Assembly (NCBI RefSeq): GCF_006345805.1
Contig: NC_043006.1
Span: 51,708,001-51,772,000 of the forward strand
Origin: Octopus sinensis
Taxonomy: Eukaryota
Direction: 5' to 3'
DNA length: 64,000 nt
The notes beneath the pieces were generated by a model. The model had not been told where the DNA came from. It saw nothing but the letters and a program-made list of their open reading frames with translations, and made no database searches. Numbering within the stretch: the first letter of the stretch is position 1; the number at the start of each line of letters is the position of its first letter. This document shows, in pieces, positions 3,795 to 60,988 of the stretch. The translations under genes were made by a program, and so were the position numbers.

Positions 3795-6480
3795 TAATAA
3801 TAATAATAATTGTGTACAGTGCTCAGGTGCATTACAACTAATCTAAAGTGTATATATAATCGGCGGATTTCGGAAAGCATGAGGGCCTTAAAGGATGCAG
3901 TGTCATGGCAGTCAACAACTGACGCAGGCAGTTTATTCCATGCTTCAGCAACTCTGAGCGTGAAAAATGTTTCCGAAAGTCATGGGAGCTGTGTTGTTTT
4001 CTGACTTTGTAGGCATGTCCACGTGTGTTAGACACATGGAGATCAAAAAGGTGTTCAGTGTTGTTGTTGGTGAGGTGGTTGATAACTTTGTGGGTGTTTA
4101 CCAAGTCCGTCGCCAGACGCCGGAGCTTCAGTGAATCCATGCCCAGGGAAACAAGGCGCTCAGAATATGGTAGGTGTCTGATGGAGGGTATGCGTTTGGT
4201 TGCACGTCTCTGGACAGATTCCAGGAGGTCAATGTTCTGAGCAAGATAGGGGTTCCAAACCGATGATGCGAATTCCAAGTGTGGTCGTACCATAGCTGTA
4301 TATAGTTTTAAATAGATGGCTGGAGAGCGGCTAACAAAAGTCTTGCTGAGTGATGCCAAGACACCCTCGGCCTTCTTGACAATTTTAGAGATATGCTTTG
4401 TCCAACGCAAATCACTGCTGACAGTGATGCCTAGGTCACGCTCGCAAGAGGATTTCTTGATATCAGTGTTGTGGAGGGAGTATGTGAACGCAGGGTTTTT
4501 TCTCCTAAAATGTATGGTGGTACAGTTGCCAGTCTGTGATCCATTGCTGCATTGTGTCTAGGTCTGATTGCAGGAAAGAGTTGTAGACATCAGGATCTGT
4601 CCTCTTGATTTCAAGGTACAACTTGATGTCGTCTGCATATTTCAATACTGTGGCATTCTTTAGATTGGCATCTATGTCATTAATGTATGCCACAAACAAG
4701 AGGGGACCAAGAACAGATCCCTGTGGTACACCCGATGACATCTCATATGGTGTAGAGTGCTGTCCTAGAACTGTGACTACCTCCTTTCGGCTGAGGATGA
4801 AGGATTTCAACCAGTTAAAAAGGTCATCCCTCACACCCATTGCAGAGAGTTTCACCATAATCCTTTTGTGTGGCACAGAGTTGAAAGCTTTAGCAAAGTC
4901 AAGGTAGACAACATCCACCCATGAGCCACTGTCAGTGATCTGAGTAATGTCCTCAAGGAACTCGACAAGCTGATCACTGCAGCTGGAGTTAGGGACAAAT
5001 CCATATTGTGAGGGTCGGATGAGACTGTGAGAGTTCCAGAAGTTCCAGAGTGTTTCTCTGACACACGATTCCATCAGTTTTGCAATACAGCTAGTGAGAC
5101 TGACTGGGCGATAGTTGACAGGTGATGTGCGGTCGCCCTTTTTGAACAGAGGAATGACACTGGCAGTTTTCCACTGCTCCGGACTAGCACCATTGTTGAG
5201 ACAGTACTGGAAGAAAATAGAAAGCTGGTGTAAAAGGAAGTACCTGCCACGTTTGAGAAGCAGGTATGTAACTCCATCGAGACCAGGGGAGGCATAGTTG
5301 CGCTTATTTTGAAGGTGACGTCGCAGCATTGCAGGTGTAAATTCCATAGTTGTTATGGAATTTGCTGTTAGTGATGGTGAAGATGGTACATTTTGACTTT
5401 CAACAGTGAATATGTTTGCATAGCACTCGGCAATGAGTTCTGCGCATTCCTTGGGGTCGTCAGTGATCTGGTTTGTGTGAGGGTTGCGAAGAAGGCCCAC
5501 TGGAGAGTGAGGTCTATGCTTTGAATGCACATATTTCCAGAAAACCTTGCTGTCAGGATTGGCTGCTATGCACTGTTCAAATTCAAGCACTGCTTTTTTT
5601 GTTACTTGCTTGAGATGGTTGGAGGATTTATTCCGCTTCTTCCTGTTGGCGTCTGATTTATGCAACTTGTATTCCCGTTCAGCAGTCCGACGTTCCTTCC
5701 TGGCAAGTCGGACCGCTGAAGTTTCCCAAATTGCCCTTTTGGGGCGGTTCTTCTTTTTCTGTTTACGTGGCACTGATGCTGCACATGCTGCCCATATTGA
5801 GTCCAGGATACTCTGGAGTATAGCATTCACATCTCCAGAGTTGTAGAATTCACGCCAGTTTGGGTGCTGTAGTTCAGTGTGGTACAGGTTCCAATCTGCT
5901 CTCTTCCAATCGAAGGAAGCAGATTGGAGATGGTTCAGGTTTTTGTTGCCCGCAAGAGCCAGATTGGCGATGATCATAGCATGATCAGAGTCACCTAGAG
6001 GTTCCTCCGTAGTGCAATTGATAACCGCTTCAGGAGTTGTGGTGAAGAGCAGGTCCAAGGTGTTGTCGCCTCTTGTTGGAGAGGTGACTACTTGTGACCA
6101 GTTTGAGTCCAGCACAAGCTCAACAAAATCGTTTGCACTCTGTGGCCAATGGAAGGTTTCCCAATTGATCTCAGGATGATTGAAATCGCCTGCAATAAAA
6201 ACATAAGTGGCTGTTTTCCTGGCAGCAGCTCGGAGGATATTGCAAAGCTGTGTGTCCTGATGGTAATTTGGGGGACGATAAACAACGCCAAGCAGGAGTG
6301 TTGACATGGTCATACGTACGTCACAGAAAAAAACTTCTTGTGATTCGTTCAAATCGGCACAAGGAATTACCGAAAAATTTGAACGAACGTAGACCATCAC
6401 ACCACCACCACGGCGGTTAATGCGGTCCTTACGGAAGAGGTTGTACCCCGTGATGTTGAAAACTCCATCACAGAGTATCA
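3795..6480 (-). mobile_element. CR1-clade LINE, 5'-truncated within the APE domain, with (AAT)n tail
   Basis: APE motifs (GYNLFRKDR..RGGGV, GDFNHPEINW, SDH) and RT motifs (YRPVSLTS, YLDFAKAF, GVPQGSVLGPLLF, YADD); C-terminus LRRLATDL. Confidence 0.93.
3838..6480 (-). pseudogene. Disrupted ORF2 (APE-RT) of the CR1-clade LINE
   Basis: ORFs 4505..6640 and 3838..4410 are broken near 4500-4520; the N-terminal HTHT run comes from a microsatellite. Confidence 0.88.
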
Positions 6481-6481
6481 C

Positions 6482-6500
6482 ATATGTATGTATGTATGTA

Positions 6501-6575
<75 letters not shown>
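6482..6575. repeat. (TATG)n(TG)n microsatellite
   Basis: Direct reading. Confidence 0.97.
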
Positions 6576-7520
6576 ACAGACATGACAGAAGTAAATAGAC
6601 ACCCCATAAAACATCGTTTTATGTTTATTCTAATTTGCAAAAGTTTATATATTTTTTATTTGACATCTGGTAGTTTCAAGTAACTTCTATTGCATCACTT
6701 GCTGCACTTTTCTGCGGGAGAGGTGTGTGCAGCATTTTTCTTTTGTTACGTTTGGGGAATATTGTATTGTATTGTATCAGTAACTTTTGTCATGGGGTTT
6801 AGTTTCACTATTCTGTTGTATTAGTGTTTGCATTGTGTGTTGCTTGTGCAGTACAGGTTGTGTTCTTCTATTGGGTATCGGGCTTCTATGGTACATATTA
6901 TGGGGTTTGTTCACTTTATTGAGTACTTATTGTATGAGTTTATTCCTGTATGATTTTGGGGGAAGTGTTGTACTGTAGCATGCGTTAACCACTTTACTGT
7001 AGTCATGGTTATCCGTCTCTCGCTCGTTTTTGGTTTTATTATTCATTTGGACAGTGACATTAAAAGATGGGTCGGCCTTTACAGGGTTTATTTTGACAAA
7101 ACACCGCATCTGGACATGTGTTGAAGTTTCTTTCGAATTGTGATTACCCGGGGCTCACTGGACGAGATTCAGTACTATTACTTTCTCCTTTATTCATTGT
7201 TCTCTATTTCTAGATTTTCCCCCCTAACACTGATCATAGTTGTTCCTTTATAGTTCAGAGGAATGAGGCTCGTTGCCTCTTTGGTTGAAGACATTTAAAT
7301 AATGTATGTGTCCATGTGTGGGTAGAATAAACTTTATAATTATTATTAGTGCATAAGCAAGAAACTGGGAAACAACAGTGTGCATATGTACAGAGGATTT
7401 GTAGAAATATGGATGCATATGTGACTATAAGTTTACTCACAGTTTTTGTATAGAGGTATTGCAGTCCACGTGTTTACATTTTCATGCACGTTTTGCTGTG
7501 GCAGCGTACCCGAGTGAAAC

Positions 7521-7523
<3 letters not shown>

Positions 7524-7559
<36 letters not shown>
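7524..7559. repeat. (TA)n microsatellite
   Basis: Direct reading. Confidence 0.97.
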
Positions 7560-7561
<2 letters not shown>

Positions 7562-8958
7562 AGCTGCATCGCCAAACTGATGGAATCCTGTATCAGAGAA
7601 ACCCCCTGGAACTTCTGGAAGTCTCACAGCCTCATCCAGCCGTCACAATTCGGATTTATTCCTAACTCCAGCTGCTGTAATCAACTCATCGAGTTTCTTG
7701 AAGATGTTACCCAAATCACTGATCGCGGATCCTGGGTGGATGTTGTTTACCTGGACTTTGCTAAGGCTTTTAACTCTGTGCCACACAAAAGACTTATGGT
7801 GAAGCTTTCTGCGTTGGGTGTAAGAGACGAACTCTATAACTGGTTAAAGTCCTTTATTTTCGGCCGAAAAGAGGTTGTCACAGTTCTAGGACAGCACTCT
7901 TCGCCCTATGAGATGACATCTGGTGTGCCGCAGGGATCTGTTCTTGGCCCCCTTTTATTTGTTGCATATGTTAATGACATAGATGCCAACTTAAAGAATG
8001 CCACAGTGCTGAAATATGCAGATGACATCAAGCTGTACCTCGAAATAAAGAGGTCAAATCCTATACACTATGGATCTCTATTGCAAGCAGACCTGGACAC
8101 AATGCAGCAGTGGATCATGGACTGGCAACTCAAGCTGGCTGTGGACAAATGTACCACCATGCATTTTGGGAGGAGAAACCCAGCGTCCACCTACTCCCTC
8201 CACAACACTAGTCTCAAAAAGTCTTCAAGTGAACGTGACCTGGGTGTTATTGTCGACAGCGATTTGCGTTGGACAAAACACATCGGTAAAATTGTCAAGA
8301 AGGCTGAGGGTGTCTTGGCATCACTCACCAAATCCTTTGTGAGCCGCTCTCCGGCTATCTATCTGCGGCTGTATATAGCTATGGTAAGACCTCACCTGGA
8401 GTTTGCATCGCCGGTCTGGAGCCCCTATCTTGCCCAGGACATCAATCGTCTGGAAGCCGTTCAGCGACGTGCAACCAAAAGAATACCCTCCATCAGGCAT
8501 TTGCCATATCCTGAACGCCTTACCTCCCTGGGCATGGACACATTGAAACTCCGACGTCTGGCAGCTGACTTGGCAGACACCCATAAAATTATCAACCATC
8601 GCACAAACAATAACTCTGAGCACCTCTTCAAACTCCACCCATCTAACACCCGTGGACATATTTACAAAGTAAGAAAACAGCACAGCTCCCATGACTTCAG
8701 GAAACATTTTTTCACGCTGAGAGTTGCTGAAGCGTGGAACAAACTGCCGACATCGGTTGTTAGTTGTCGGAGCACTGCTTCCTTCAAGACTTCCATGCTT
8801 CCTGAGATTCGCCAACACTACACTTGATTTTCTCCCCTCCATACACCCAGACATTTCTACACTACTGCATGTACTTTATATGCACTTTCTGACAAGTTGT
8901 GGTGCACCTGAGCACTGTATACAATAATTTCATTATTATTATATTATTATTATTATTA
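7559..8958 (+). mobile_element. CR1-clade LINE, 5'-truncated RT half with uninterrupted frame to the stop at 8827, 3' UTR and (TTA)n tail
   Basis: ORF 7484..8827 carries YLDFAKAF, GVPQGSVLGPLLF, YADD and FFTLRVAEAWNKLP; same family as 3795-6480. Confidence 0.93.
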
Positions 8959-22164: not shown

Positions 22165-23575
22165 TCTTGCTACTCCTGCCCTTGGATAGAGTCCACCATA
22201 TTGAATTCCCTCCTAGTTCTTCTGTCTAGCTTTGTTAATCCAGTTTTTGTCCAATATACAAAAGCTGCTGAGTATCTAAGTAATGATATTGCCCAAGTAT
22301 TTACAACCTTCACTAGATTCGGACCAGTTAGATTTGACTTCATTAGCTTCCTCACCTTCCTGATGCACTCTCTCTCAATTTTCGTTTTCATTTCTGTAGT
22401 TAGTACCCTGTCAGATTCTAATACTCCTAGATACTTATAACTCTCTCCTCCTTTCAATGATTTTAATGTTTGGCCATCTGGTAATTAAATGCCTTCGCTG
22501 TTGATACCTGTCCCCTTCGCATGACTAGTATTGCACACTTATCTATGCCAAATTCCTTGCCTACATCTTTGCTGAAGAGTCTTACAGTCTGTATTAAGGA
22601 ATTGATCTCTTCATTCTTATTAAAAAGCTTCAGATCATCCATGTAGAGCAAATGGTTATTTTTTCCATTACTGTTTCTGAACCAATACCCTGCCTTTGCC
22701 TTCCTTAATACTAAACTGAGAGGGAACAAACATAAGACAAATATTAAAGAGGACAACGAGTTCCCCTGGAAAATTCCTCTTTTGATATTAACTTTCCCTA
22801 AGTGTGTGTCTCCTGAGTAGAGATATACTTTCCATTTCTTCATGCTAAAGGTAATCAATTCTCTTATGTTGTCTGCTATACTGAATATACTCAGATATTC
22901 ACTTATCCATGAGTGTGGGATCATGTCATAGGCTTTCCTATAATCTATCCATGCTGTTGTTAGATTTTTCTTTCTAGCTTTTCTTTCATTTAGAACTGCT
23001 TTGTCTATGTATAATAGATTATGCGTTTCTCTAGCCTTCTTCCTGCAACCTTTCTGTTCTGGCGGTAAATTCTGATTGTCAAAGTGCTTGTAAATGCTTT
23101 CTGAAAGCATTCCTGTTAACAGCTTCCACACTAATGCTAAGCAAAGGATTGGTCTATAGATTCTACCTGTCTTACCTTTGCTTTTATCTTTCATGATGAG
23201 TATTGTCCTCCCTCTAGTCATCCAATCTGGTATTATTCCTTCATTAAGGCAATCTTGAAGTTGTTCCCGCAGCCTTCCATGTAAACTATTAAATTTATTT
23301 ATGTAGTACCCTTGAACTAAATCTGGTCCTGGGCCTTTCCAAATTGGCATTTTTCTAGCACTTTACTCATTAATGCACTAGTTAGTCTTAGATCTGGTTG
23401 CTTCTCACTCACTAATTCTTCCCTCACTTTCTTTAACCATACTGCATCTCCATTATGATTGGCTGGCTTATTTGTTAATATTACTCCAGAACTTTCTAAC
23501 TTCTTCTGCATTAGGTTTTTCATCTTCAGTACTTTGTTCTCCACTATTTATTTTGTTATAAGATCTCCTCTGGTC
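22165..23575 (-). mobile_element. R4/Dong RT fragment
   Basis: WKGPGPDLVQGYY, WIDYRKAYDMIPHSW, GIFQGNSLS, LLYMDDLKL, YKYLGVLE. Confidence 0.9.
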
Positions 23576-28434: not shown

Positions 28435-31304
28435 GTTTGACTTTTGCTTTATATTTGTACAAGTTGGCTCCAAATCTCACCCAGAGACCTCAAGAGACAA
28501 CAGGGTTGGAAGTTCATGTTGTTGTTATGCCTAGTGTGCCATATATTTGGGGGGTGGGGATGTTGTACTAATGAATGTCTAAAAAAAAAGGTTTTTTTTT
28601 TTTTTTTAAACCGAAAATTATGTTTGTTTTAAACCTTGAGATTACATAGAGAGTATTTTGCGTAGGATATGAGCAGTTCCCATGAGCACTATCTTTTGAA
28701 CTTCTGCCATTTTTGGGTTTCCTGGTATCTGAGTTAGGTAGCTATCAGCCCCTTTTGCTATCATTCCCAGGGCACCTATGACAACAGGTATTGTTTTAGT
28801 CTTCAGCTTCCACATTTTGCTGATTTCTATTTCAAGATCTTTATATTTGCTCAGTTTTTGGTAGGTCTTGACAGATACGTTTATATCGATTGGGACAGTC
28901 ATATCAATGAGGAGGCATGTTCTTTGTTTGAAGTTTTTCAATATGATGTCTGGCCTATTTGCATCTATCTTCCTGTCAGTTTGAATGGTGAAGTTCCAGA
29001 GGAGTGAGATGTGGTCATTTTCAAGCACTGCGGGTGGTTTGTGTTCCTACCAGTTTTTTTCATGGGGCAAATCCAGGTTTTTACAGATTACCCAGTGAAT
29101 ATATTGTGCAGCTCTATCGTGCCTGTTGAGATACTCTGTAGGCGCTAGAAGACTGCACTTGGAGACCACATGGTCAATGGTTTCATTTTGTTGCTTGCAT
29201 ACACGACACGTTGGACTGCTTCTGATCTTTAATATGTTGGCCTGGTAGTTTCTTGTTGGTAGGCATTGATCTTGAGCTGCTATGATAAACCCCTCTGTTT
29301 CAGATTTTAAGCCAGAGGCCATTAGCCATTGATGGGTCAGGGCTTTGTCGATATCTGCATTATTCGCTCTCTTTGGGTATTTGCCATAGAGAGGTTTTTC
29401 TTGCCATTTATTATTCAGAATATCTAAGGCCGCAGTTTTGGCACGGGTTTTCATGCGCCTAGCTTTTTCTGTGCTTGTTTCTTGTATATCTATCTCTAAT
29501 TCCGAAATTGGTTGTATTCGGAATTCACTTAGATATTCCTTTGCCTGTTTTGTGACTGAGTATGATGCTTTCTTGTTTTCATGTTTTGAGACAAGTTTTA
29601 GCATCCAGTCCTCAGAGTTTTTCAGGTAGGTGTCTAGGCCAATTGTAGCAATCTTCATTGTTATTGCCAGTTGCAAAAGACCACGGCCTCCCTCTTTTCT
29701 TGGCAGATAGAGTCGTTCTGTATCTGCCTTAGGGTGGTGCATTCTATGCATTGTCAACAGTTTCCTTATTTTTCTGTCGAGCTGACATATTTCAGTAATT
29801 GACCAGTTAACAATATTGAAACTGTAAGTCACGACTGGTATAGCTAATGCATTGATTGCTTCGATCCTGTTTCTTGCATTCAGCTCTGTCTTGAGTATTG
29901 CTCTCACTCTTCGATAGCATTCTCTCCTGATCCTTTCCTTCATCTCTGAATGCCTTATTCCGTTCCCTTCAATTATCCCTAGGTACTTGTAGCTCTCCGC
30001 TGGGTCTAGTTCTTTTATGACATTCTGTTGGTCAAGGTTAACGTTAGATGTTTCTGTCATTTTTCCTTTGATAAAGGTAGCCTTTGCACATTTATCGAGG
30101 CCAAATTGCATTCTGATGTCGTCACTGAATTGTTTGACTATCGCTAGTAAGCCCTTGAGTTGTTGATCATTTTTTGCAAAAAGCTTTAAATCATCCATGT
30201 AAACGAGATGATTTATATTTTTATCAAACATTTTATACCCGTACTGCGCATCATTGAGCAGCTTTGAGAGAGGTATTAAGGATAAACAAAAGAGGAGTGG
30301 TGACAGTGAGTCACCCTGGAAAATGCCACACGAAATTTTTACATCACCAGCATTTAGGGATTCACTGTCACTGTTCAGAGTTAGTGTGGTTCTCCATGAT
30401 CTCATACTTACAGTCAAGAAGTTTCGCAGAGTTGGTGCTATCTTATACATTTCAAGGCATTTCCTAATCCAGCTATGTGGTAGGCTATCAAAAGCCTTTT
30501 TATAGTCTATCCAGGCTATTGATAAGTTTTTGTGTCGTTTGTGACAATCTTCTAAGATCATCTTATTGATGAGTAGTTGGTCTTTACAGCCGTAGGATCC
30601 ACGTTTACATCCTTTCTGTTCATTAGGGAATATGCTGCTGTCTGTTAAAAAACTATAGGTATATTCCGTCAGGACAGATGTTAGTGTTTTGTACATAGTT
30701 GTTAAGCAGGTTATGGGTCTATAGTTTTTTGGTTCATTTGTTTCTTCACTTTTTGGAAGCAGGAATGTTAACCCATTAACTAGCCAAGGAGGCATCCTAC
30801 TAGGGTGTTGCAAAACATCATTGTACAGTTCTGTTAGCAGTTCATGGCTCTCTGGGAAGGCATTCAGCCAGAAGTTAGGAATTTTATCCTTTCCTGGAGA
30901 CTTCCATTTGCTTGACCTCCTGAGAGCAGATCTTATATCTTCTACCTTGACACCCTCCACTTTTGCTCTTCTAAGGGGTCCAGTTCTGTAGATATTCTGT
31001 CAATCCAGGGGGCCTTTTCGTTGTGTGTTTTTTCTTCTGCCCAGATTTTATTCCAAAATCTCTGCACTTCTTCTTTTGATGGTACAGACCCTGCAGTAAA
31101 CGCTGTTTTTCCTATCTTCCTGTAAAAATTCTTGGTGTTATTTTTGAACATGTTGTTGTCCTTGAAAAATCTAACACGCTTTTCATACCTCGCTATGCGG
31201 GCAGCTTTGGCAGATACCTTTTGTTTGATGGTTTCTATGGTGGCATCAATATCAAGTATAGTTTTCATATTGTATTTTTTCAGTAATTTTTGGGTTTTTG
31301 TAGG

Positions 31305-43514: not shown

Positions 43515-43736
43515 TTCGTTTTTGTAATTGGTTTGCGAGATTTTTATGTGAATTTGTGTTGAGGCATATTTCACAAAACAACTATTGAAGAGGTTGCAAG
43601 AAGCAATGAAAATTTTTTAGCCAAAATAAATATATATGAATGGAAATCGAACTGGTGAGTGTGTTAATTAATAAGGCTTTAAAACAGAATGAAATGACTC
43701 TCCCCAGACATAATATGTATATATATATGTGTGTGT

Positions 43737-52345: not shown

Positions 52346-52548
52346 ATGGAAACATGCAAATGCTTTTGTATGTAATTATGTCATACCCGGTTACAGTGAA
52401 TCAAGATTAAAAAAAATAGCAAATGAAATAGCTAAGATTAGCAAAGATAGTCAAACCTACACGCATAATTTTAGCAAACAATATATTAGATGACAGAATT
52501 CTTTTAGTGATTAACTGGCACCGACATTTCGCTGGCATTTCATCTGCT
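52346..52548 (+). mobile_element. Penelope-like fragment
   Basis: Near-identical to ~59545-59745. Confidence 0.85.
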
Positions 52549-53914: not shown

Positions 53915-53951
<37 letters not shown>

Positions 53952-53975
53952 GTAATAATAATAATAATAATAATT

Positions 53976-54423
53976 ATATGCAGTACCAGGCAGTGGCTCT
54001 CATGGCTTTTGATCTTAACTGATTGAAAGTATTATTATGTACATTGTTTTGTCTTGGTATAAAAGATGGGCTAGAGCAGATATTCTACTCAATACCACAG
54101 ATTTGCTTGTCAGTTGCTCAACCTTAACCAGTTGACCATGTCCCTCAGTGGCTGATGATATGTGCATCTCTGATCATGAGTAGAAGTAGTAGGGGAGCAT
54201 CATAGCCATGTGTTGAGAAGAATTCTTTGGGGTTTGAATAATTCATCTCTGGAAACATTGGTGTTTTGCTCCTCATCTTTAAACAATCTTTATTCAGTGA
54301 CCTTTTGAGCAGGATGGGCTACTCAACCTGAAGGAAATTCTAACTGGGCCTCACCTGCAAGGTTATGTGCTGTTCATGTTGATATAAGATCACTATGTTG
54401 TGCACAGATGGTTGTGATGCATG
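53976..54423 (+). mobile_element. SINE-like family A, plus strand, 3'-truncated, preceded by (AAT)n
   Basis: atatgcagtaccaggcagtggctctcatgg... Confidence 0.88.
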
Positions 54424-54479
54424 TTGAGCGATTGCTTGGAAAAAGTATGGCAAAGTGGAGGACGGAACTTTCTAGCATT

Positions 54480-55345
54480 TTTCTTATGCTTTCGTTTTGC
54501 AATTCCCCTCTACTCAGTCGATCAACATGTCCTAAATTTCTTTTTAACTCTGTTTCTCACAAATGCGCCTATGTCAGTATGGTTTTTTACGTTCTGTTTG
54601 TTCTCTTCTTTTGTATCTAACTCTATCTGTGGCAACCAAAGCTGAAACCCAAATAATCTTGTTAGATGCAGTTATATTTCTCATCTAGTATAGCCCAAAT
54701 ACCAAATCTATCTTTTGGGTTTCAACTTTGAGCATGCGTCGATCAATGTACCTCAGATTGATGTGGGGAGGGTGCTTGATCCTGGTCTTCTCTAATATAT
54801 TGGCACAGCATCCTCACTGTGTCTTGGTCATCATCATATTCTTGTGATACAGCTCTTCCCATTACTTCTGCTTCATTTACTGAGAATGAATTTACATTTG
54901 CACTTTGCTCTACGCCTTCACTGCTGCCGTTCATTTCTCTTTCCTCGATGATCACGTTATCTGTTGGTGAAGTATTATTTCTATTTTCAACTTTCCTTTT
55001 TATCTCTTCAATTTCCACGTCTGTTAACCACCCTTTTGCTCTTATTGCTCTTGCTTGGTTGGCTAACCATTTTGAAGGGTCCTATTTCATTCCATTTTAC
55101 TGTCATACATTGTTGAAACCCCCTTCTACTGGGTTCATACCTGATCCAGCAGTCAATTCCTGTTCGGTTTGCCTCCTTATCCCACCTTCTTCTCTGCCTC
55201 TGACTTTGTGTATAAGCAGTCTCTGGATGATGATCGGGCCTGCGCTGCTCAACCACAGGGCACTTGCTGGGCGAAAGGCTTTCACTTTTGGTTCCAGCCT
55301 CATTAACACCATTATTTGATACATTTGTATTAGACATTTTCATTC
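54480..55345 (-). mobile_element. R4/Dong N-terminal fragment
   Basis: RRRWDKEAN...DCWIRYEPSRRGF...EIEEIKRK, the same N-terminal motif class as 20372..20761. Confidence 0.7.
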
Positions 55346-55427
55346 AACATTGAGGTTTGTGCTTTAAGGTTAGCCACCAACCAGTATTTTTATCGAGACA
55401 CCATCTCTAGTAAGATCATCAACTATT

Positions 55428-55850
55428 GAGTGAGAGAGCAGTGCATACCATGAAAGTGACACTGGGGTAAAATATACAAAGCCCAGTGTACCTATCATGA
55501 CTATCTGTCTGATTAGGGTACATCAGGTACATGTGCGCGACATGGTTATCTCATATCAAGATAAGCAGCACATGATTTTGCAAGTGGGATCCAGTTAGAA
55601 TTTTCTTCAGGTCGAGTAGCCCATCCCACTCAAAAGGTCCCTGAATTAATGTTGTTTAGGGAACGAAACACCCATGTTTCTAAAGGTGAATTATCCAAAC
55701 CCCAAAGACACATGACTATGATGCTTCCCCACTACTTCTGCTTGTGAGCAGAGATGCACATATCGTCAGCCACTGAGGTATATGCTCAGCTGGTTAAGGT
55801 CGAGCAACTGACAAGCAAATCTGTGGTATTGAGCAGAATATTTGCTGTAG

Positions 55851-55852
<2 letters not shown>
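55428..55852 (-). mobile_element. SINE-like family A, 5'-truncated
   Basis: ttgagtgagagagcagtgcat...gagcagaatatttgctgtag. Confidence 0.88.

Positions 55853-55931
<79 letters not shown>
55853..55931. repeat. (TTA)n microsatellite; others at 15604-15645, 23745-23785, 28376-28431, 31306-31367, 56271-56339 and 60560-60627
   Basis: Direct reading. Confidence 0.97.
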
Positions 55932-56270: not shown

Positions 56271-56339
<69 letters not shown>

Positions 56340-56341
<2 letters not shown>

Positions 56342-56880
56342 TTTAAAAAGGATTGACGTAACTCTTCACAAAGGTAAACAGTCAAGACGAAGAGCGCGAT
56401 TCGATTGTAAGATATTTTATTAGTTGAATGATATTTCAACAGTACGTCTGTCTTTGTCAAGTTCAAAATAAGAAGTGATAAAAATTCAAAATTACAGAAA
56501 TTTAAACGTAAAGTATGAACGAGAGCAACCAGTGTCCTCACGTTGATGGAATGACATCATCATCAACGCTAGTTTTTGAAAAACTAGACGTAAATTTTAT
56601 GTTGGACTTTATGACGTGGGCTTGCAAAATAACTCTGCCACTATTCTGCCTCAAGAAAACTTGACTTTTTTGTCCAACATAAAATTTACGTCTAGTTTTA
56701 CAAAAACTAACGTTGAATTTTTGGACACAAAAGTCAAGTTTTCTGGAGACAGAATAGTGACGGAGTTATTTTGCAAGCCCACGTCATCCCACATTTATCT
56801 CCACTGCCTCTTCGATCATCCACATCATCTTATTCGAAATCCCAATTTTTGAGGATAAAACGGATTTGTAATCAAGAAAT
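56340..56880 (+). mobile_element. Penelope-like element, left part: inverted pLTR (56340-56590, minus strand) plus RT fragment (~56600-56880, plus strand)
   Basis: IKFT...VEFLDTKVK...TELFCKPT..HIYLH...HP and QFLRIKRICNQE; 56380-56560 is the reverse complement of 60380-60560. Confidence 0.88.
56424..56466 (-). ncRNA. Minimal type I hammerhead ribozyme motif (inverted pLTR copy)
   Basis: TTGAAC TTGACAA A GACAG acgta CTGTT GAAA TATC ATTCAA; the first 3' stem I base is G to A. Confidence 0.6.
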
Positions 56881-59535
56881 TTGATGAGAGGGAGGAGGAG
56901 CTACAGACGTCGGACATAGAAGGTAGCTGGAAATTCCTACGGGACAGCTTGCTGAGTGCCACAGACCAAGTCTGTGGATGGTGCAAAGTCCCTTCCAGAC
57001 CTAGAGTTACGTCGTGGTAGAATAGTGCAGTAGACAAAGCCATTAGTGCAAGGAAACAGGCCTGGAGAGCCTGGAGGGATGGGGGTAGCAGGGAACCGTA
57101 CCAAGTAGCCAAAAGGGAGGCCGGGCGGCAGGTATACATAGCCAAAGATATAGCAGAAAAGAAGAAGTTTGCCAATGTCCAGCGACGTGAGGACCAAAGA
57201 ACTGAGGTATTTCGGATTGCTAGACAGTGTGTGAGAGAAAATAGTGATGTCACAGGAGAGAAATGTGTCCGCATGGATGATGGGGCACTTGCTTTTAATG
57301 TTGGTGAAAAGAAAGAGGCTTGGAGAAGCCATTATGAAAGACTGGTGAATGTGGAGAATGAATGGGAGGAGGAGAGTCTGCCAAATGTTGACCCAGTAGA
57401 GGGACCAGCTATCCAAATAGACAGCTCCCTTGTAGTTAAGGCAATTAAGGGTATGAAACCAGGTAAAGCCCCCAGCCCATCAAGTATCACTGCTGAGATG
57501 CTTAAAACAGCTGGTTATGTGGGCTATGGCCTAGTCACCCGCATTGTAAACCAGGTAGTTTATAATGGAGTCATACCCAATGACTGGCGTAGCAGCACCA
57601 TAGTCAACTGCTACAAGGGTAAGGGTGATGCTCTAGATAGAAATAACTACAGGGGTATTAAACTGTTGGATCAGGTGATGAAGGTCACAGAGAGAGTCAT
57701 AACCCATCTCATTAGGGAGAGAATTTGCTTAGATGAGATGCAGTTCGGTTTTGTGCCGGGTAGAAGCACCACTGATGCTATATTTCTGGTCCGACAACTG
57801 CAGGAGAAGTACCTAGCTAAAGATAAACCCCTCTACATAGCTTTTGTGGACTTGGAGAAAGCCTTTGACAGGGTTCCCCGATCCCTTATCTGGTGGTCGA
57901 TGCGGAAACTGGAGATTGACGAATGGCTAATAAGTGCTGTACAGGCTCTATACAGAGAGGCTGTCAGCAAGGTTAGGATTGGCAACGAATATAGTGAAGA
58001 ATTCCGGGTAGAAGTAGGTGTACACCAAGGCTCAGCCCTCGGTCCCCTTTTATTCATCATACTCCTCCAGGCAATAACAGAGGAATTCAAAACAGGATGC
58101 CCCTGGGAGCTCCTCTATGCTGATGACCTGGCTCTCATAGCAGAATCACTACCGGAACTAGAAAAGAAATTTCGGGTGTGGAAACAAGGGTTAGAATCAA
58201 AGGGCCTTAGAATAAATGTAGCGAAGACCAAAGTTATAGTAAGCAGAAAGGCAAACTTAGCACACACCCCATCGGGCAGGTGGCCCTGCTCGATCTGTAG
58301 GAAAGGTGTAGGTAGAAACTCCATAAGATGCACCCAGTGTAAGCTATGGACGCATAAGAGGTGCAGCAACATCAAAGGGAAATTAACTGATAAGATAGCT
58401 TTCATGTGCGGCAGATGCACAGGGACAATAGACACCACAAATACTCAGAAAACAGATTCCATCACACTCCAGGGGGAGAAACTAGAAGTAGTTGATAGTT
58501 TCCGCTACCTGGGTGACCAAGTTAGTAGTGGAGGTGGATGCTCAGACAGTGTCACCACTAGAATACGAATATACTGGGCAAAGTTTAGAAAGCTCCTACC
58601 CCTACTGGCGACAAAGGGTCTCTCACTCAGAGTGAAAGGTAGATTGTATGATGCATGTGTGCGAACTGCCATGCTTCACGGTAGTGAAACATGGGCCGTG
58701 ACAGCAGAGGACATGCGTAGACTTGAAAGAAGTGAAGCTAGCATGATCCGCTGGATGCGTAATGTCAGTGTGAATGCGCGACAGAGTGTAAGCACCCTGA
58801 GAGAAATGCTAGACATAAGAAGCATCAGATGCGGTGTGCAAGAGCGACGCTTGCGATGGTATGGTCATGTACTGCGGATGGATGAGGAGAAATGTGTGAA
58901 GAAGTGCCGCTCCCAAACAGTTGAAGGAATCAGGGGTGAGGTAGACCCAGGAAGACATGGGATGAGGTAGTCAAACATGACCTCAGAGCGTTGGACCTCA
59001 CTGAGGCAATGGCGAAGGACCTAGATCTCTGGAGATGTGCTGTGACTACAAAGACCCGGGATGCTTCCGGCACCAGTTCCGCATAGCCCCTGCCCGTTCA
59101 AAGTACCTTGGATCCCGGAACATCTCGCTGTGCTTGAGGAGACCTGTTGAGACAAGTGCATGTACATGAACATCGAAACAAATATCAATGGAAATAGTAG
59201 TTGTGATACCTGTGCCGGTGGCACATAAAAAGCACCATCCGAACGTGGCCGTTGCCAGCGCCGCCTCGACTGTCTTCTGTGCCGGTGGCACATAAAAAGC
59301 ACCATCCGAACGTGGCCGATGCCAGACCCCCCCCTGGCACCTGTGCAGGTGGCACGTAAAAAGCACCCATTACACTCGCGGAGGGTTGGCGTAAGGAAGG
59401 GCATCCAGCTGTAGAAACACTGCCAGATCAGACTGGAGCCTGGTGCAGCTCCTGGCTTCCCAGACCCCGGTCGAACCGTCCAACCCGTGCTAGCGCGGAA
59501 AACGGACGTTAAACGATGATGATGATGATGATGAT
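56881..59535 (+). mobile_element. 5'-truncated RTE-clade LINE with (GAT)n tail, nested in the Penelope element
   Basis: RT ORF 57231..58970; 3' end acggacgttaaac(gat)n. Confidence 0.93.
57231..58970 (+). CDS. RTE reverse transcriptase (no APE) with C4HC3 finger; C-terminal frameshift near 58935
   Basis: NNYRGIKLL, FVDLEKAFDRVPR, GVHQGSALGPLLF, YADD, FRYLG, RRLRWYGHVLRM. Confidence 0.88.
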   Translation: MRENSDVTGEKCVRMDDGALAFNVGEKKEAWRSHYERLVNVENEWEEESLPNVDPVEGPAIQIDSSLVVKAIKGMKPGKAPSPSSITAEMLKTAGYVGYGLVTRIVNQVVYNGVIPNDWRSSTIVNCYKGKGDALDRNNYRGIKLLDQVMKVTERVITHLIRERICLDEMQFGFVPGRSTTDAIFLVRQLQEKYLAKDKPLYIAFVDLEKAFDRVPRSLIWWSMRKLEIDEWLISAVQALYREAVSKVRIGNEYSEEFRVEVGVHQGSALGPLLFIILLQAITEEFKTGCPWELLYADDLALIAESLPELEKKFRVWKQGLESKGLRINVAKTKVIVSRKANLAHTPSGRWPCSICRKGVGRNSIRCTQCKLWTHKRCSNIKGKLTDKIAFMCGRCTGTIDTTNTQKTDSITLQGEKLEVVDSFRYLGDQVSSGGGCSDSVTTRIRIYWAKFRKLLPLLATKGLSLRVKGRLYDACVRTAMLHGSETWAVTAEDMRRLERSEASMIRWMRNVSVNARQSVSTLREMLDIRSIRCGVQERRLRWYGHVLRMDEEKCVKKCRSQTVEGIRGEVDPGRHGMR

Positions 59536-60560
59536 AGGGGATTACTGGAAACATGCAAATGCTTTTGTATGTAATTATGTCAAACGCGGTTACAGTGAAT
59601 CACGGTTAAAGAAAATAGCAAATGAAATAGCTAAGATTAGCAAAGATAATCAAATCTACACGCATAATTTTAGCAAGCACAATACATTAGATGACAGAAT
59701 TCTTTTAGTGATTAACTGGCACCGACATTTCGCTGGCATTTCAAAAGTGTTGTCTGCAAGTTACCAGCATGTGGCGAAAAAATATCCTCGTTTCAAACAG
59801 ATATTTCCTCAGCCGCCTATTGTAGCCTTTAGACGGAATAAGAATATAAGAGAATTATTGACCTCTATAACTGACTCAAAGAAAACGAACACTTGAGTAT
59901 CTGCACGCTGTACCTTAAAGAACAGCCGCAAGAGAGGTAAGCTCTGCTCATCGTGCAACAACATAAGTGAAATGGATTCCATCAGAAATCATAACAGAAA
60001 TTTATGTTGGTTGTACAACACAGAACAATTAAACAAAAGGTTTAATGGGCACAGATTCGACGTCAGGCACAATAACAGTAGTTTGATAGAACTTGCTGAA
60101 CATTTCGTTTCAAGCGGCTGCAATTGTGAAAAAGACTTGAAAGTACATATTCTCAGAAAATATTCTGTATCTGTTTCCACTTTCACTTTTCAGAATGTGT
60201 GAAGAGAAATATTTGCGGGTTTATTAACATCACGCCCTTGAGGAATGAATAAGATGACAGGAGAATATCATCAAATTTATACACAACTGTTTGATTAAAT
60301 ATTCTTCTTTCTCTCTTTTTCTTTCCTTTTTTTCTGTCTTTTTTCTTTTCGCCTGTTATAAAACTGTAACTTAAAAACTGATGATGTCATTCCATCAACG
60401 TGTGGACACTGGTTGCTCTCGTTCATACTTTACGTTTAAATTTCTATAATTTTGAATTTTTATCACTTCTTATTTTGAACTTGACAAAGACAGACGTACT
60501 GTTGAAATATCGTTCAACTAATAAACTATCTCACAATCGAATCGCGCTCTTCGTCTTGAC
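59536..60560 (+). mobile_element. Penelope-like element, right part: RT thumb, degenerate GIY-YIG endonuclease, 3' pLTR
   Basis: DYWKHANAF..YVKRGYS, PPIVAFRRNKNIRELL, YVGCTT/EQLNKRFNGHR, LAEHF. Confidence 0.88.
60475..60517 (+). ncRNA. Minimal type I hammerhead ribozyme motif, U3-A8 core variant
   Basis: Stem I TTGAAC/GTTCAA; core TTGACAA; A; stem II GACAG/CTGTT; GAAA; palindromic ATAT stem III; predicted cleavage after C60511. Confidence 0.72.
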
Positions 60561-60607
<47 letters not shown>

Positions 60608-60627
60608 TATTATTATTATTATTATTA

Positions 60628-60988
60628 TCTCCTCTATATATATAAACGGCAAAATGTCTGCGTGTGTGTCTTTTATACAAATCCACAATTTTTCAGTTAG
60701 AGGGCTCGCACTTTCTATGGTCATTCAAAATCGTCCAACGGTGGTCGTGCACATCTTTACATTCCCCCAGTCACCCCTCAAAGGCATTAAAAAATCAATA
60801 GAAGTGACTTTTTTGTGAATTTTCTATCCAAAACCCAACCAAAATGCCCGAAACTTGATACGCCAGTTGAATGCCAGCTAACTGTATGTGATTGGTCGGA
60901 GATTTGGACAGTACTCGCGTGTGCACGCACGCAGCTGTATATGCATGCACTAGCACTATGACCCGGCGTTGCTGGGTCATAGTGCTAG
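60628..60988 (+). mobile_element. Non-autonomous Helitron-like element (361 bp)
   Basis: A|TC...TCTATATATATAAA 5' end; 3' hairpin then CTAG|T; inserted between A and T. Confidence 0.75.

What the first reader, a model, noticed from the sequence alone, without database searches (positions are those of the whole stretch)
60470..60524. Minimal hammerhead ribozyme with a compensatory U3-A8 catalytic core in the Penelope 3' pLTR
Seen: TTGAAC-[TTGACAA]-A-GACAG-acgta-CTGTT-[GAAA]-TATC-GTTCAA, with perfect 6-bp stem I (extendable by TTATT/AATAA), 5-bp stem II closed by G-U, and palindromic ATAT stem III. Established: Penelope-like elements carry minimal type I hammerheads with palindromic stem III thought to cleave as dimers, and core positions 3 and 8 form a Watson-Crick pair for which C3-G8 to U3-A8 swaps retain activity. 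Inference: the two apparent core mutations are a covarying pair, so this may be a functional non-canonical ribozyme family that CUGANGA-based searches miss. Caveat: two of the three deviations are also explicable as CpG decay.
Basis: partly seen in the sequence, partly recalled or inferred. Interest (0 to 1): 0.8.

Follow-up and report, generated by a model that had tools for sequence, protein, structure and literature searches.

The report
Penelope-element hammerhead with U3-A8 core
This is a real minimal hammerhead ribozyme motif at the 3' end of a dead Penelope-like retrotransposon; its unusual U3-A8 core is inherited across the lineage rather than mutational decay, but the same variant was described in 2011 and 2014, so it is a new example of a known thing.

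Summary
Window 60475-60517 (+) reads TTGAAC|TTGACAA|A|GACAG-acgta-CTGTT|GAAA|UA|U-C|GTTCAA. That is a type I minimal hammerhead with a 6-bp stem I, a 5-bp stem II and a palindromic AUAU helix III. An inverted second copy lies at 56466-56424 (-).

The motif sits about 215 nt downstream of a decayed GIY-YIG endonuclease remnant, 49 nt before the 3' end of a 5'-truncated Penelope-like element (PLE). That element was inserted, together with an inverted partial copy, into an (ATT)n microsatellite.

Eleven homologous hammerheads were found in two PLE families whose endonuclease proteins are about 33% identical. All 11 have A8 and 10 have U3. Position 7 is U in the sister family, which rules out CpG decay as the source of A8 there. 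Stems I and II are kept by compensatory changes, while the catalytic core is invariant. U3-A8 is therefore the lineage consensus, not decay.

Natural U3-A8 hammerheads were reported by Perreault et al. 2011. U3-A8 minimal hammerheads in PLEs (about 1,300 in Schistosoma) were reported by Cervera & de la Peña 2014. This is a new member of a known kind.

Catalysis was not tested. This copy is a relic with no same-strand partner, and its AUAU helix III is very weak.

The parts
60475..60517 (+). Minimal type I hammerhead, copy 1: stem I, U3-A8 core, A bulge, 5-bp stem II, GAAA, palindromic AUAU. The predicted cleavage site is after C60511. The stem I extension spans 60470-60524.
   Evidence: model R1, 61.7 bits
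56424..56466 (-). Hammerhead copy 2, inverted. It is identical to copy 1 except G1.1 to A at 56429 (CpG to CpA), which breaks the innermost stem I pair.
   Evidence: 60.6 bits
60379..60560 (+). 3'-terminal non-coding segment of the forward PLE copy, shared at 97% with the inverted copy. The element body ends at ...CGTCTTGAC, with no tail.
56351..56562 (-). 3'-terminal segment of the inverted partial PLE copy (56562-56381) plus a 30-nt PLE 'tail', TGTTTACCTTTGTGAAGAGTTACGTCAATC (56380-56351). The tail is also present in the related locus L001.
   Evidence: the tail is a published PLE signature (PMC8557442, PMC11167929)
59534..60260 (+). Decayed C-terminal part of the PLE ORF: linker with a Cys-rich motif and a GIY-YIG endonuclease remnant. 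It has in-frame stops and the GIY segment is deleted.
   Evidence: 31-34% identity to PLE endonuclease proteins, E 3e-25
56658..56828 (+). Upstream piece of the same forward PLE ORF (post-RT region, FLDTKVKF...KPTSS). It is separated from the rest by a ~2.7-kb later insertion.
   Evidence: 51% identity, E 5e-12
56612..56683 (-). Short inverted duplicate of the FLD...KPTS ORF piece. It belongs to the inverted partial copy.
   Evidence: (I12)
56829..59533 (+). Later insertion that splits the PLE. It holds a LINE-type RT ORF (57231-58970; RVT_1 + PHD) and a SINE-like repeat (about 59021-59535). It is not part of the PLE.
56272..56339 (.). Left half of the (ATT)n target microsatellite.
60561..60628 (.). 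Right half of the (ATT)n target microsatellite. It has the same + strand polarity as the left half.
52347..52542 (+). A separate fragment of the same PLE family, 95% identical to 59546-59743. It has no hammerhead attached.

Best explanation
The motif is the minimal type I hammerhead that Penelope-like elements carry near their 3' end, in a PLE lineage where the core Watson-Crick pair C3-G8 has been replaced by U3-A8.

Inferred mechanism in active elements:
- Two copies of the motif, in a tandem transcript or on two RNAs, pair through the palindromic A15.1-U-A-U16.1 to build a 4-bp helix III.
- G12 then acts as general base on the 2'-OH of C17.
- The ribose 2'-OH of residue 8 acts as general acid. 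Residue 8 is held in place by pairing with residue 3, here A8 with U3.
- The chain is cut between C17 and G1.1 (window 60511|60512).

What is shown:
- the motif and its position in a PLE;
- conservation of the core, with compensatory change in the stems, across two PLE families;
- U3-A8 as the lineage consensus.

What is inferred: catalysis, dimer dependence, and any role in processing PLE RNA.

At this locus the motif is a fossil. The element is 5'-truncated, its ORF is broken and interrupted, and it has no same-strand partner. The RNA that was reverse-transcribed into these copies was uncut at this site, because the sequence is continuous across C17|G1.1.
For: Motif and statistics.

Folding: the minimum-free-energy structure equals the hammerhead stems, and RNAalifold predicts the same stems on its own.

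PLE context:
- GIY-YIG remnant 59534-60260 and post-RT piece 56658-56828.
- A 30-nt tail on one copy only, an adjacent inverted 5'-truncated copy and a microsatellite target. These match published PLE hallmarks (PMC8557442; PMC11167929; PMC4209133 mentions dual minimal hammerheads on opposite strands).

Comparative evidence:
- L001/L002, 74% identical overall, keep U3, A8 and U11.1.
- ENA loci L005, L006, L008 and L009 carry the same architecture 190-300 nt downstream of PLE endonuclease ORFs.
- Of 11 hammerheads, A8 is in 11 and U3 in 10. G5, A6, A9, the bulged A, G12-A14, A15.1 and U16.1 are invariant.
- 96% of stem cells are paired, against 31-52% when the partners are slid. Six pairs show changes on both sides.
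- P0003, next to one such hammerhead, represents a cluster of 100 member sequences at 90% identity, which suggests a recently active family.

Literature: natural U3-A8 variants exist and exchanges at these positions are active in vitro (PMC3088659). A C3G/G8C double mutant partly rescues a PLE hammerhead (PMC11167929).
Against: - No cleavage data exist for this sequence.
- Helix III would be an all-A/U 4-bp duplex. The AUAU self-duplex is +1.6 kcal/mol, against -1.7 for ACGU and -2.5 for AGCU. PLE minimal hammerheads already cleave poorly in vitro even as dimers.
- Only two or three copies of the window's own family were reachable, and all are decayed. The two window copies probably arose in one insertion event. 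L001 has U4 to C and a broken 1.1-2.1 pair.
- No intact young copy from the window's genome was examined.
- Hammerhead mutants did not affect PLE insertion in vitro, and no RNA-seq reads end at the cut site in Anolis.
- Naiad PLEs thrive without hammerheads.
- The fold energy z-score is weak, at -1.43.
Confidence: 0.85

Rival explanations
1. It is a decayed canonical hammerhead. The ancestral core was CUGACGA, and C3 to U, G8 to A (CpG decay) and C11.1 to U (CpG decay) are independent neutral mutations in a dead copy.
For: The window has CpG depletion, with observed/expected 0.47. G8 and C11.1 would both sit in CpG dinucleotides. Copy 2 shows a fresh CpG to CpA change at position 1.1. The element is clearly dead.
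Against: U3 and A8 are shared by a copy only 74% identical. They are also shared by a sister PLE family in another assembly, where position 7 is U, so A8 cannot be a CpG product there. No copy out of 11 has G8. C3 to U is not a CpG change. This explanation remains plausible only for U11.1.
Confidence: 0.04
2. It is a hammerhead-derived but catalytically inert RNA structure. It would be retained because the PLE RT/EN protein recognises the 3'-terminal RNA fold, for example to position internal initiation of reverse transcription 49-79 nt downstream. In that case U3-A8 merely reflects relaxed catalytic constraint.
For: - Hammerhead catalytic mutants do not affect PLE insertion in vitro, and RT initiates at defined internal sites close to the hammerhead (PMC11167929).
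- The inserted copies were templated by RNA uncut at this site.
- The 30 nt upstream of stem I are as conserved as the hammerhead itself, 87% against 86%, with flanks at 68-76%.
- Helix III is extremely weak.
Against: Every catalytically essential base (G5, A6, A9, G12, A13, A14, A15.1, U16.1, and H17 never G) is invariant across families whose stems have turned over by compensatory change. That pattern is expected for catalysis and not required for a protein-binding hairpin junction. Positions 3 and 8 remain Watson-Crick complementary rather than drifting.
Confidence: 0.1
3. It is a chance resemblance to the hammerhead consensus in AT-rich repetitive DNA.
For: Short relaxed descriptors do hit by chance. 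A weak hit with a 3-bp stem I lies at 43579-43623, and most of the 120 metagenome pattern matches fail the stem test.
Against: There were 0 hits in 60 shuffles for the full descriptor. The motif has a homologous position downstream of PLE endonuclease ORFs in several loci, and covariation supports the stems.
Confidence: 0.01

Closest known systems
U3-A8 minimal hammerheads of Schistosoma mansoni Cercyon PLEs (Cervera & de la Peña 2014, PMC4209133)
   Same: Both are minimal type I hammerheads in a PLE terminal region with U3-A8 in place of C3-G8. Both have an extra nucleotide between A9 and 10.1 and a palindromic helix III. Both occur mostly as single or opposite-strand copies linked to truncated PLEs.
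   Different: The host and PLE family differ. Here the GIY-YIG element carries a Cys-rich linker and sits in a window that is unverified but presumed to be cephalopod. Here stem II is 5 bp and stem I 6 bp, whereas Schistosoma has 7-8 bp and 4-5 bp. Here helix III is AUAU only and 11.1 is U.
Canonical-core PLE minimal hammerheads (CUGANGA) that cleave as dimers (Cervera & de la Peña 2014; Lünse, Weinberg & Breaker 2017, the latter cited from memory and via PMC6765202)
   Same: The architecture is the same, down to bulge A, 5-bp stem II, 5-nt loop and GAAAUAUC. It was found here in metagenome contigs L018 and L084 with CTGATGA and in L008:7207-7248 with CTGACGA.
   Different: The core pair is C3-G8. 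Helix III palindromes are often ACGU or AGCU, which are more stable.
Natural U3-A8 hammerheads outside PLEs (Perreault et al. 2011, PMC3088659) and engineered C3/G8 exchanges (Przybilski & Hammann 2007, cited there)
   Same: The compensatory core pair is the same, and exchanges at these positions were shown active in vitro.
   Different: Those are full hammerheads with a stable helix III and tertiary loop contacts, not minimal dimer-dependent motifs in retrotransposons.
Metazoan non-LTR retrozymes (Cervera & de la Peña 2020, PMC7229834; Li et al. 2026 bioRxiv 10.64898/2026.07.22.740005)
   Same: Both are type I hammerheads related to PLE pLTRs.
   Different: Retrozymes are short tandem non-coding repeats that form circular RNAs. 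Here the motif is attached to a PLE coding remnant and no tandem array is present.

Membership tests
Hammerhead ribozyme (type I, minimal PLE form) | Core box 1: C3 U4 G5 A6 N7 G8 A9, with 3 and 8 Watson-Crick paired | tested here: met
   The box reads U3 U4 G5 A6 C7 A8 A9. Positions 3 and 8 are U-A, a published natural covariant. The strict CUGANGA string is not met.
Hammerhead ribozyme (type I, minimal PLE form) | Core box 2: G12 A13 A14, the A15.1-U16.1 pair, and a cleavage-site nucleotide H17 (not G) | tested here: met
   GAAA at 60504-60507, U16.1 at 60510 and C17 at 60511. These are invariant in 11 of 11 homologues, with H17 either C or U.
Hammerhead ribozyme (type I, minimal PLE form) | Helices I and II flanking the core, supported by covariation | tested here: met
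   Stem I is 6 bp and stem II 5 bp. 96% of cells are paired and 6 pairs changed on both sides. Slid controls give 31-52%. RNAalifold predicts the same stems.
Hammerhead ribozyme (type I, minimal PLE form) | Extra unpaired nucleotide between A9 and 10.1 (Cervera & de la Peña 2014) | tested here: met
   A60488; present as A in 11 of 11 homologues.
Hammerhead ribozyme (type I, minimal PLE form) | G10.1-C11.1 closing pair of helix II | tested here: inconclusive
   The pair is G-U in the window copies and L001. Across the 11 homologues it is G-C in 5 and G-U in 6. U11.1 is consistent with CpG decay of C11.1-G12.
Hammerhead ribozyme (type I, minimal PLE form) | Very short, palindromic helix III that allows dimer formation | tested here: met
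   A15.1-U-A-U16.1 (AUAU) is self-complementary. As a duplex it is weak, +1.6 kcal/mol.
Hammerhead ribozyme (type I, minimal PLE form) | Site-specific self-cleavage after position 17 | not testable with these tools
   This needs in vitro transcription and cleavage assays.
Hammerhead ribozyme (type I, minimal PLE form) | Match to the Rfam hammerhead covariance models | tested here: not met
   No hammerhead hit at gathering score or at E up to 10. A canonical-core minimal hammerhead used as control is also missed, so this test is uninformative for minimal forms.
Penelope-like element (EN+ with C-terminal GIY-YIG) | GIY-YIG endonuclease domain C-terminal to the RT | tested here: met
   Remnant at 59534-60157, 31-34% identical to proteins with Pfam GIY-YIG hits. 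The GIY segment is deleted and stops are present. Pfam itself finds nothing on the window fragment.
Penelope-like element (EN+ with C-terminal GIY-YIG) | PLE-type reverse transcriptase | tested here: not met
   Only a 57-aa post-RT piece survives, at 56658-56828, because the copy is 5'-truncated. The RT ORF at 57231-58970 is a LINE inserted later. Related loci L006 and L009 do have RVT_1 ORFs upstream of the endonuclease.
Penelope-like element (EN+ with C-terminal GIY-YIG) | Optional 30-40 bp tail at one end; an adjacent inverted 5'-truncated copy; bias toward microsatellite targets | tested here: met
   The 30-nt tail is on the inverted copy and on L001 only. An inverted partial copy is present. 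(ATT)n lies on both sides. These are described in PMC8557442 and PMC11167929.
Penelope-like element (EN+ with C-terminal GIY-YIG) | Direct pseudo-LTRs (partial tandem), each carrying a hammerhead | tested here: not met
   There is no direct repeat of the 3' segment in the window. The only other copy is inverted.

The most novel reading that the evidence does not exclude
A whole clade of GIY-YIG Penelope-like elements has permanently fixed the U3-A8 core together with an all-A/U AUAU helix III. The clade spans at least two families whose endonuclease proteins are about 33% identical and which come from different hosts. If these RNAs still cleave, the clade would be a natural, long-lived alternative hammerhead core. 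It could show how much of the C3-G8 requirement is purely geometric, and whether PLE hammerheads depend on a protein or RNA partner to dimerise.
Probability: 0.3. Interest if true: 0.4.

Novelty: new member of a known kind. Interest (0 to 1): 0.25.

Why it matters
It adds a further PLE lineage, presumed to be molluscan or cephalopod, to the known natural U3-A8 hammerheads. It also shows by comparison that the pair is stably inherited rather than transitional. The practical point is for annotation. CUGANGA string searches (as used for 'HHR_core' in PMC8557442) and the Rfam models do not see these motifs, so PLE hammerhead censuses undercount them. It does not open a new question, because the variant, its PLE association and its in vitro tolerance are all published.

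Tried and rejected
- Rfam found no hammerhead hit at gathering score on the whole window, or in E-value mode on 401-nt and 76-nt stretches. The only hits were weak chance matches to the c-di-GMP-I-UAU riboswitch and mir-6. The canonical minimal hammerhead used as control was also missed.
- A protein search with the spurious ORF that spans the hammerhead (60400-60561), intended to pull more genomic copies, found nothing.
- An exact or degenerate DNA scan of the metagenome contigs for this family's hammerhead gave 0 matches.
Only 3 passed the stem test, and these had CTGATGA or CTGATAA cores from an unrelated family. Model R1 found nothing convincing in the first 100 of those loci, the ones it was run on.
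- Loci L003, L004, L007, L010 and L011 end before a hammerhead or lack one.
- The organism behind the Logan and ENA accessions could not be identified from the literature, so the 'cephalopod' label is unverified.
- Lünse et al. 2017 is not held in the library.
- I considered whether the RT ORF at 57231-58970 belongs to the PLE and rejected the idea. It has LINE-type motifs plus a PHD finger, and it splits the PLE ORF.
- I considered a retrozyme tandem array and rejected it, because there are no tandem copies.

Full report
**1. Observation**

- Stem I 5' strand: 60475-60480, TTGAAC.
- Core: 60481-60487, TTGACAA, which is U3 U4 G5 A6 C7 A8 A9.
- Extra A: 60488.
- Stem II: GACAG (60489-60493), loop ACGTA, CTGTT (60499-60503). 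The closing pair is G10.1-U11.1.
- G12 A13 A14 A15.1: 60504-60507.
- U-A: 60508-60509. U16.1: 60510. C17: 60511.
- Stem I 3' strand: 60512-60517, GTTCAA.
- TTATT (60470-60474) and AATAA (60520-60524) can extend stem I across a CT bulge.

A descriptor requiring the core (canonical or U3-A8), both stems and a palindromic helix III gave no hit in 60 dinucleotide-preserving shuffles of the 64-kb window on both strands, against one observed. The minimum-free-energy fold of the 55-, 121- and 186-nt contexts is precisely stems I and II around an open core. The energy z-score is modest, at -1.43.

That copy lies in a 186-nt inverted repeat that is 97% identical (56377-56562 against 60379-60564). Within the hammerhead, copy 2 differs only by G1.1 to A, a CpG to CpA change.

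**2. What surrounds it**

The frame starting at 59402 encodes a decayed protein with in-frame stops. It aligns at 31-34% identity with proteins from public assemblies that carry Pfam GIY-YIG and HTH_animal hits and sit next to RVT_1 ORFs. This is the linker plus GIY-YIG endonuclease end of a Penelope-like element (PLE). The GIY segment is deleted.

The next piece of the same ORF upstream lies at 56658-56828 (51% identity). The forward copy is therefore split by about 2.7 kb of later insertion. That insertion holds a LINE-type RT ORF (57231-58970; RVT_1 + PHD) and a SINE-like repeat.

To the left lies an inverted partial copy. It comprises an ORF piece at 56683-56612 (-) and the 3' terminal segment at 56562-56381 (-). 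That segment is followed by a 30-nt extension, TGTTTACCTTTGTGAAGAGTTACGTCAATC. The forward copy lacks this extension, but a related locus (L001) has it.

The + strand reads (ATT)n on both outer sides, at 56272-56339 and 60561-60628. The composite therefore looks like a single insertion into one microsatellite.

All of these are published PLE hallmarks:
- an optional 30-40 bp tail at one end, an adjacent inverted 5'-truncated copy and a microsatellite bias (Craig et al. 2021, PMC8557442);
- the tail corresponding to two internal reverse-transcription start sites (Frangieh et al. 2024, PMC11167929);
- dual minimal hammerheads on opposite strands near truncated PLEs (Cervera & de la Peña 2014, PMC4209133).

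The 'Penelope' context is therefore right. The label '3' pLTR' is loose, because no direct repeat and no same-strand partner hammerhead exist in the window. The hammerhead lies about 215 nt after the ORF remnant. Its cut site is 49 nt before the element end, or 79 nt with the tail.

**3. Is U3-A8 covariation or decay?**

I retrieved related loci through the endonuclease remnant.

- L001/L002 are Logan contigs 74% identical to 60201-60545. They carry TTGAAC|TCGACAA|A|GACGG-tctta-CTGTT|GAAA|TATC|TTTCAG. U3, A8 and U11.1 are shared. U4 has become C, pair 10.4 changed from A-U to G-U, and pair 1.1-2.1 is broken.
- Four 20-kb ENA loci (L005, L006, L008, L009) come from an assembly whose PLE endonuclease proteins are about 33% identical to the window remnant. 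A descriptor scan and a covariance model built here (R1) found eight more hammerheads of the same architecture there. They lie 190-300 nt downstream of endonuclease ORFs or in inverted copies. The typical form is TTATGA|TTGATAA|A|GGTTG-aatta-CAGCC|GAAA|TA|TT|TCATGA.

Over the 11 hammerheads:
- A8 is present in 11 and U3 in 10. One copy has C3·A8. None has G8.
- In the sister family position 7 is U, so A8 there cannot be the product of C7pG8 decay.
- G5, A6, A9, the bulged A, G12-A14, A15.1 and U16.1 are invariant, and H17 is C or U.
- The stems have turned over by compensation. 96% of cells are paired, against 31-52% with slid partners. Six pairs changed on both sides, and 0 of 500 shuffles reach the covariation score. 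RNAalifold predicts the same stems unaided.
- P0003, the endonuclease protein next to one U3-A8 hammerhead, stands for a cluster of 100 sequences at 90% identity. This suggests a family that was active recently.

It is not met in anything I could reach.

Three caveats apply. The two window copies probably arose in one insertion event and are not independent. Only L001 adds a second sample of the window's own family. All three are decayed. U11.1 (5 C against 6 U across the set, preceding G12) may well be CpG decay.

**4. Mechanism**

By homology with the hammerhead, G12 would deprotonate the 2'-OH of C17. The 2'-OH of residue 8 would protonate the leaving group. Residue 8 is positioned by its Watson-Crick pair with residue 3 (Martick & Scott 2006, as summarised in PMC3884650, and PMC11167929). 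A U-A pair preserves this geometry.

Perreault et al. 2011 state that C3-G8 covaries to U3-A8 in several natural hammerheads, and that such exchanges had already been shown active in vitro by Przybilski & Hammann 2007 (PMC3088659).

Helix III is a single A-U pair with a 2-nt loop, so a monomer cannot form it. Two motifs can pair AUAU with AUAU. That duplex on its own is unfavourable, at +1.6 kcal/mol, against -1.7 for ACGU and -2.5 for AGCU. Published PLE minimal hammerheads cleave poorly in vitro even as dimers. I therefore expect weak, partner-dependent activity at best.

The copies are continuous across C17|G1.1, so the template RNA was not cut at this site. This agrees with the finding that unprocessed RNA is the insertion substrate and that hammerhead mutants do not impair insertion in vitro.

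A structural, non-catalytic role, such as marking the 3' region for the RT, is the main live rival. Two observations favour it. The 30 nt upstream of stem I are as conserved as the hammerhead, 87% against 86%, with flanks at 68-76%. The reverse-transcription start sites also lie close by. The invariance of every catalytic base, while the stems covary, argues for selection on catalysis.

**5. Comparison with what is known, and novelty**

Cervera & de la Peña 2014 described exactly this. They found minimal hammerheads in PLE terminal repeats, including a variant with 'U3-A8 instead of C3-G8' in Schistosoma mansoni Cercyon elements. A dedicated descriptor retrieved about 1,300 copies. [quoted passage not shown] The G10.1-C11.1 pair is met only in part.

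The same architecture with a canonical core also exists. It appears as CTGATGA in metagenome contigs L018 and L084 and as CTGACGA in L008.

Rfam detects none of these, including the canonical control. The database miss therefore reflects the minimal architecture, not the U3-A8 pair.

I found no paper that links PLE hammerheads with U3-A8 to cephalopods. I also could not verify the organism of the window or of the related contigs.

Verdict: a real feature, correctly read, and a new member of a known kind. What is added is comparative evidence that the U3-A8 pair is stably fixed across a PLE clade. Interest is low to moderate.

Noticed in passing
window 56272-56339 and 60561-60628: The + strand reads (ATT)n on both outer sides of the inverted-plus-forward PLE composite. 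The two hammerhead copies therefore probably entered in one insertion event into a single microsatellite and are not independent samples.
   Followed up: partly
window 56351-56380 (-); L001 about 1795-1825: A 30-nt PLE 'tail' (TGTTTACCTTTGTGAAGAGTTACGTCAATC) is present on the inverted copy and in L001 but absent from the forward copy. This fits the two internal reverse-transcription start sites reported for an Anolis PLE.
   Followed up: partly
window 56563-56716: The inverted partial copy is scrambled. After the FLD...KPTS piece comes sequence that lies upstream of it in the forward copy, and this is then joined to the 3' terminal 186 nt near an AAAAACT/TGA microhomology. This suggests template switching during insertion.
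   Followed up: no
window 56829-59533: A later insertion splits the PLE ORF. It holds a 579-aa LINE-type RT ORF (57231-58970; RVT_1 + PHD finger) and a SINE-like repeat with a 67-nt tandem (59208-59367). The repeat has 73-81% identical relatives at about 33736, 38358, 43197 and 46006.
   Followed up: partly
window 52347-52542: This is another fragment of the same PLE family, 95% identical to 59546-59743. It ends abruptly and has no hammerhead attached.
   Followed up: no
window 53915-55931: A second inverted-repeat structure (arms 54066-54406 and 55532-55855, 82-89% complementary) is flanked by (AAT)n on the left and (ATT)n on the right. Neither the descriptor nor model R1 found a hammerhead. 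It is possibly another head-to-head retroelement pair in a microsatellite.
   Followed up: no
window 4505-6640 (-), 7484-8827 (+), 22463-23350 (-), 29047-30960 (-): There are several LINE-type RT ORFs (RVT_1, with Exo_endo_phos or zf-RVT). The window is repeat-dense eukaryotic DNA with 38% GC and CpG observed/expected of 0.47.
   Followed up: partly
L008:7207-7248 (-), L009:9438-9482 (-), and L018/L084: Minimal hammerheads with a canonical core (CTGACGA, CTGAGGA, CTGATGA) coexist with the U3-A8 family in the same assembly or in other metagenomes. Their helix III palindromes are ACGU, AGCU or AUAU.
   Followed up: partly
window 43579-43623 (+): A weak hammerhead-like hit (TTGAAGA core, 3-bp stem I, non-palindromic helix III). 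It is judged to be a chance match.
   Followed up: no
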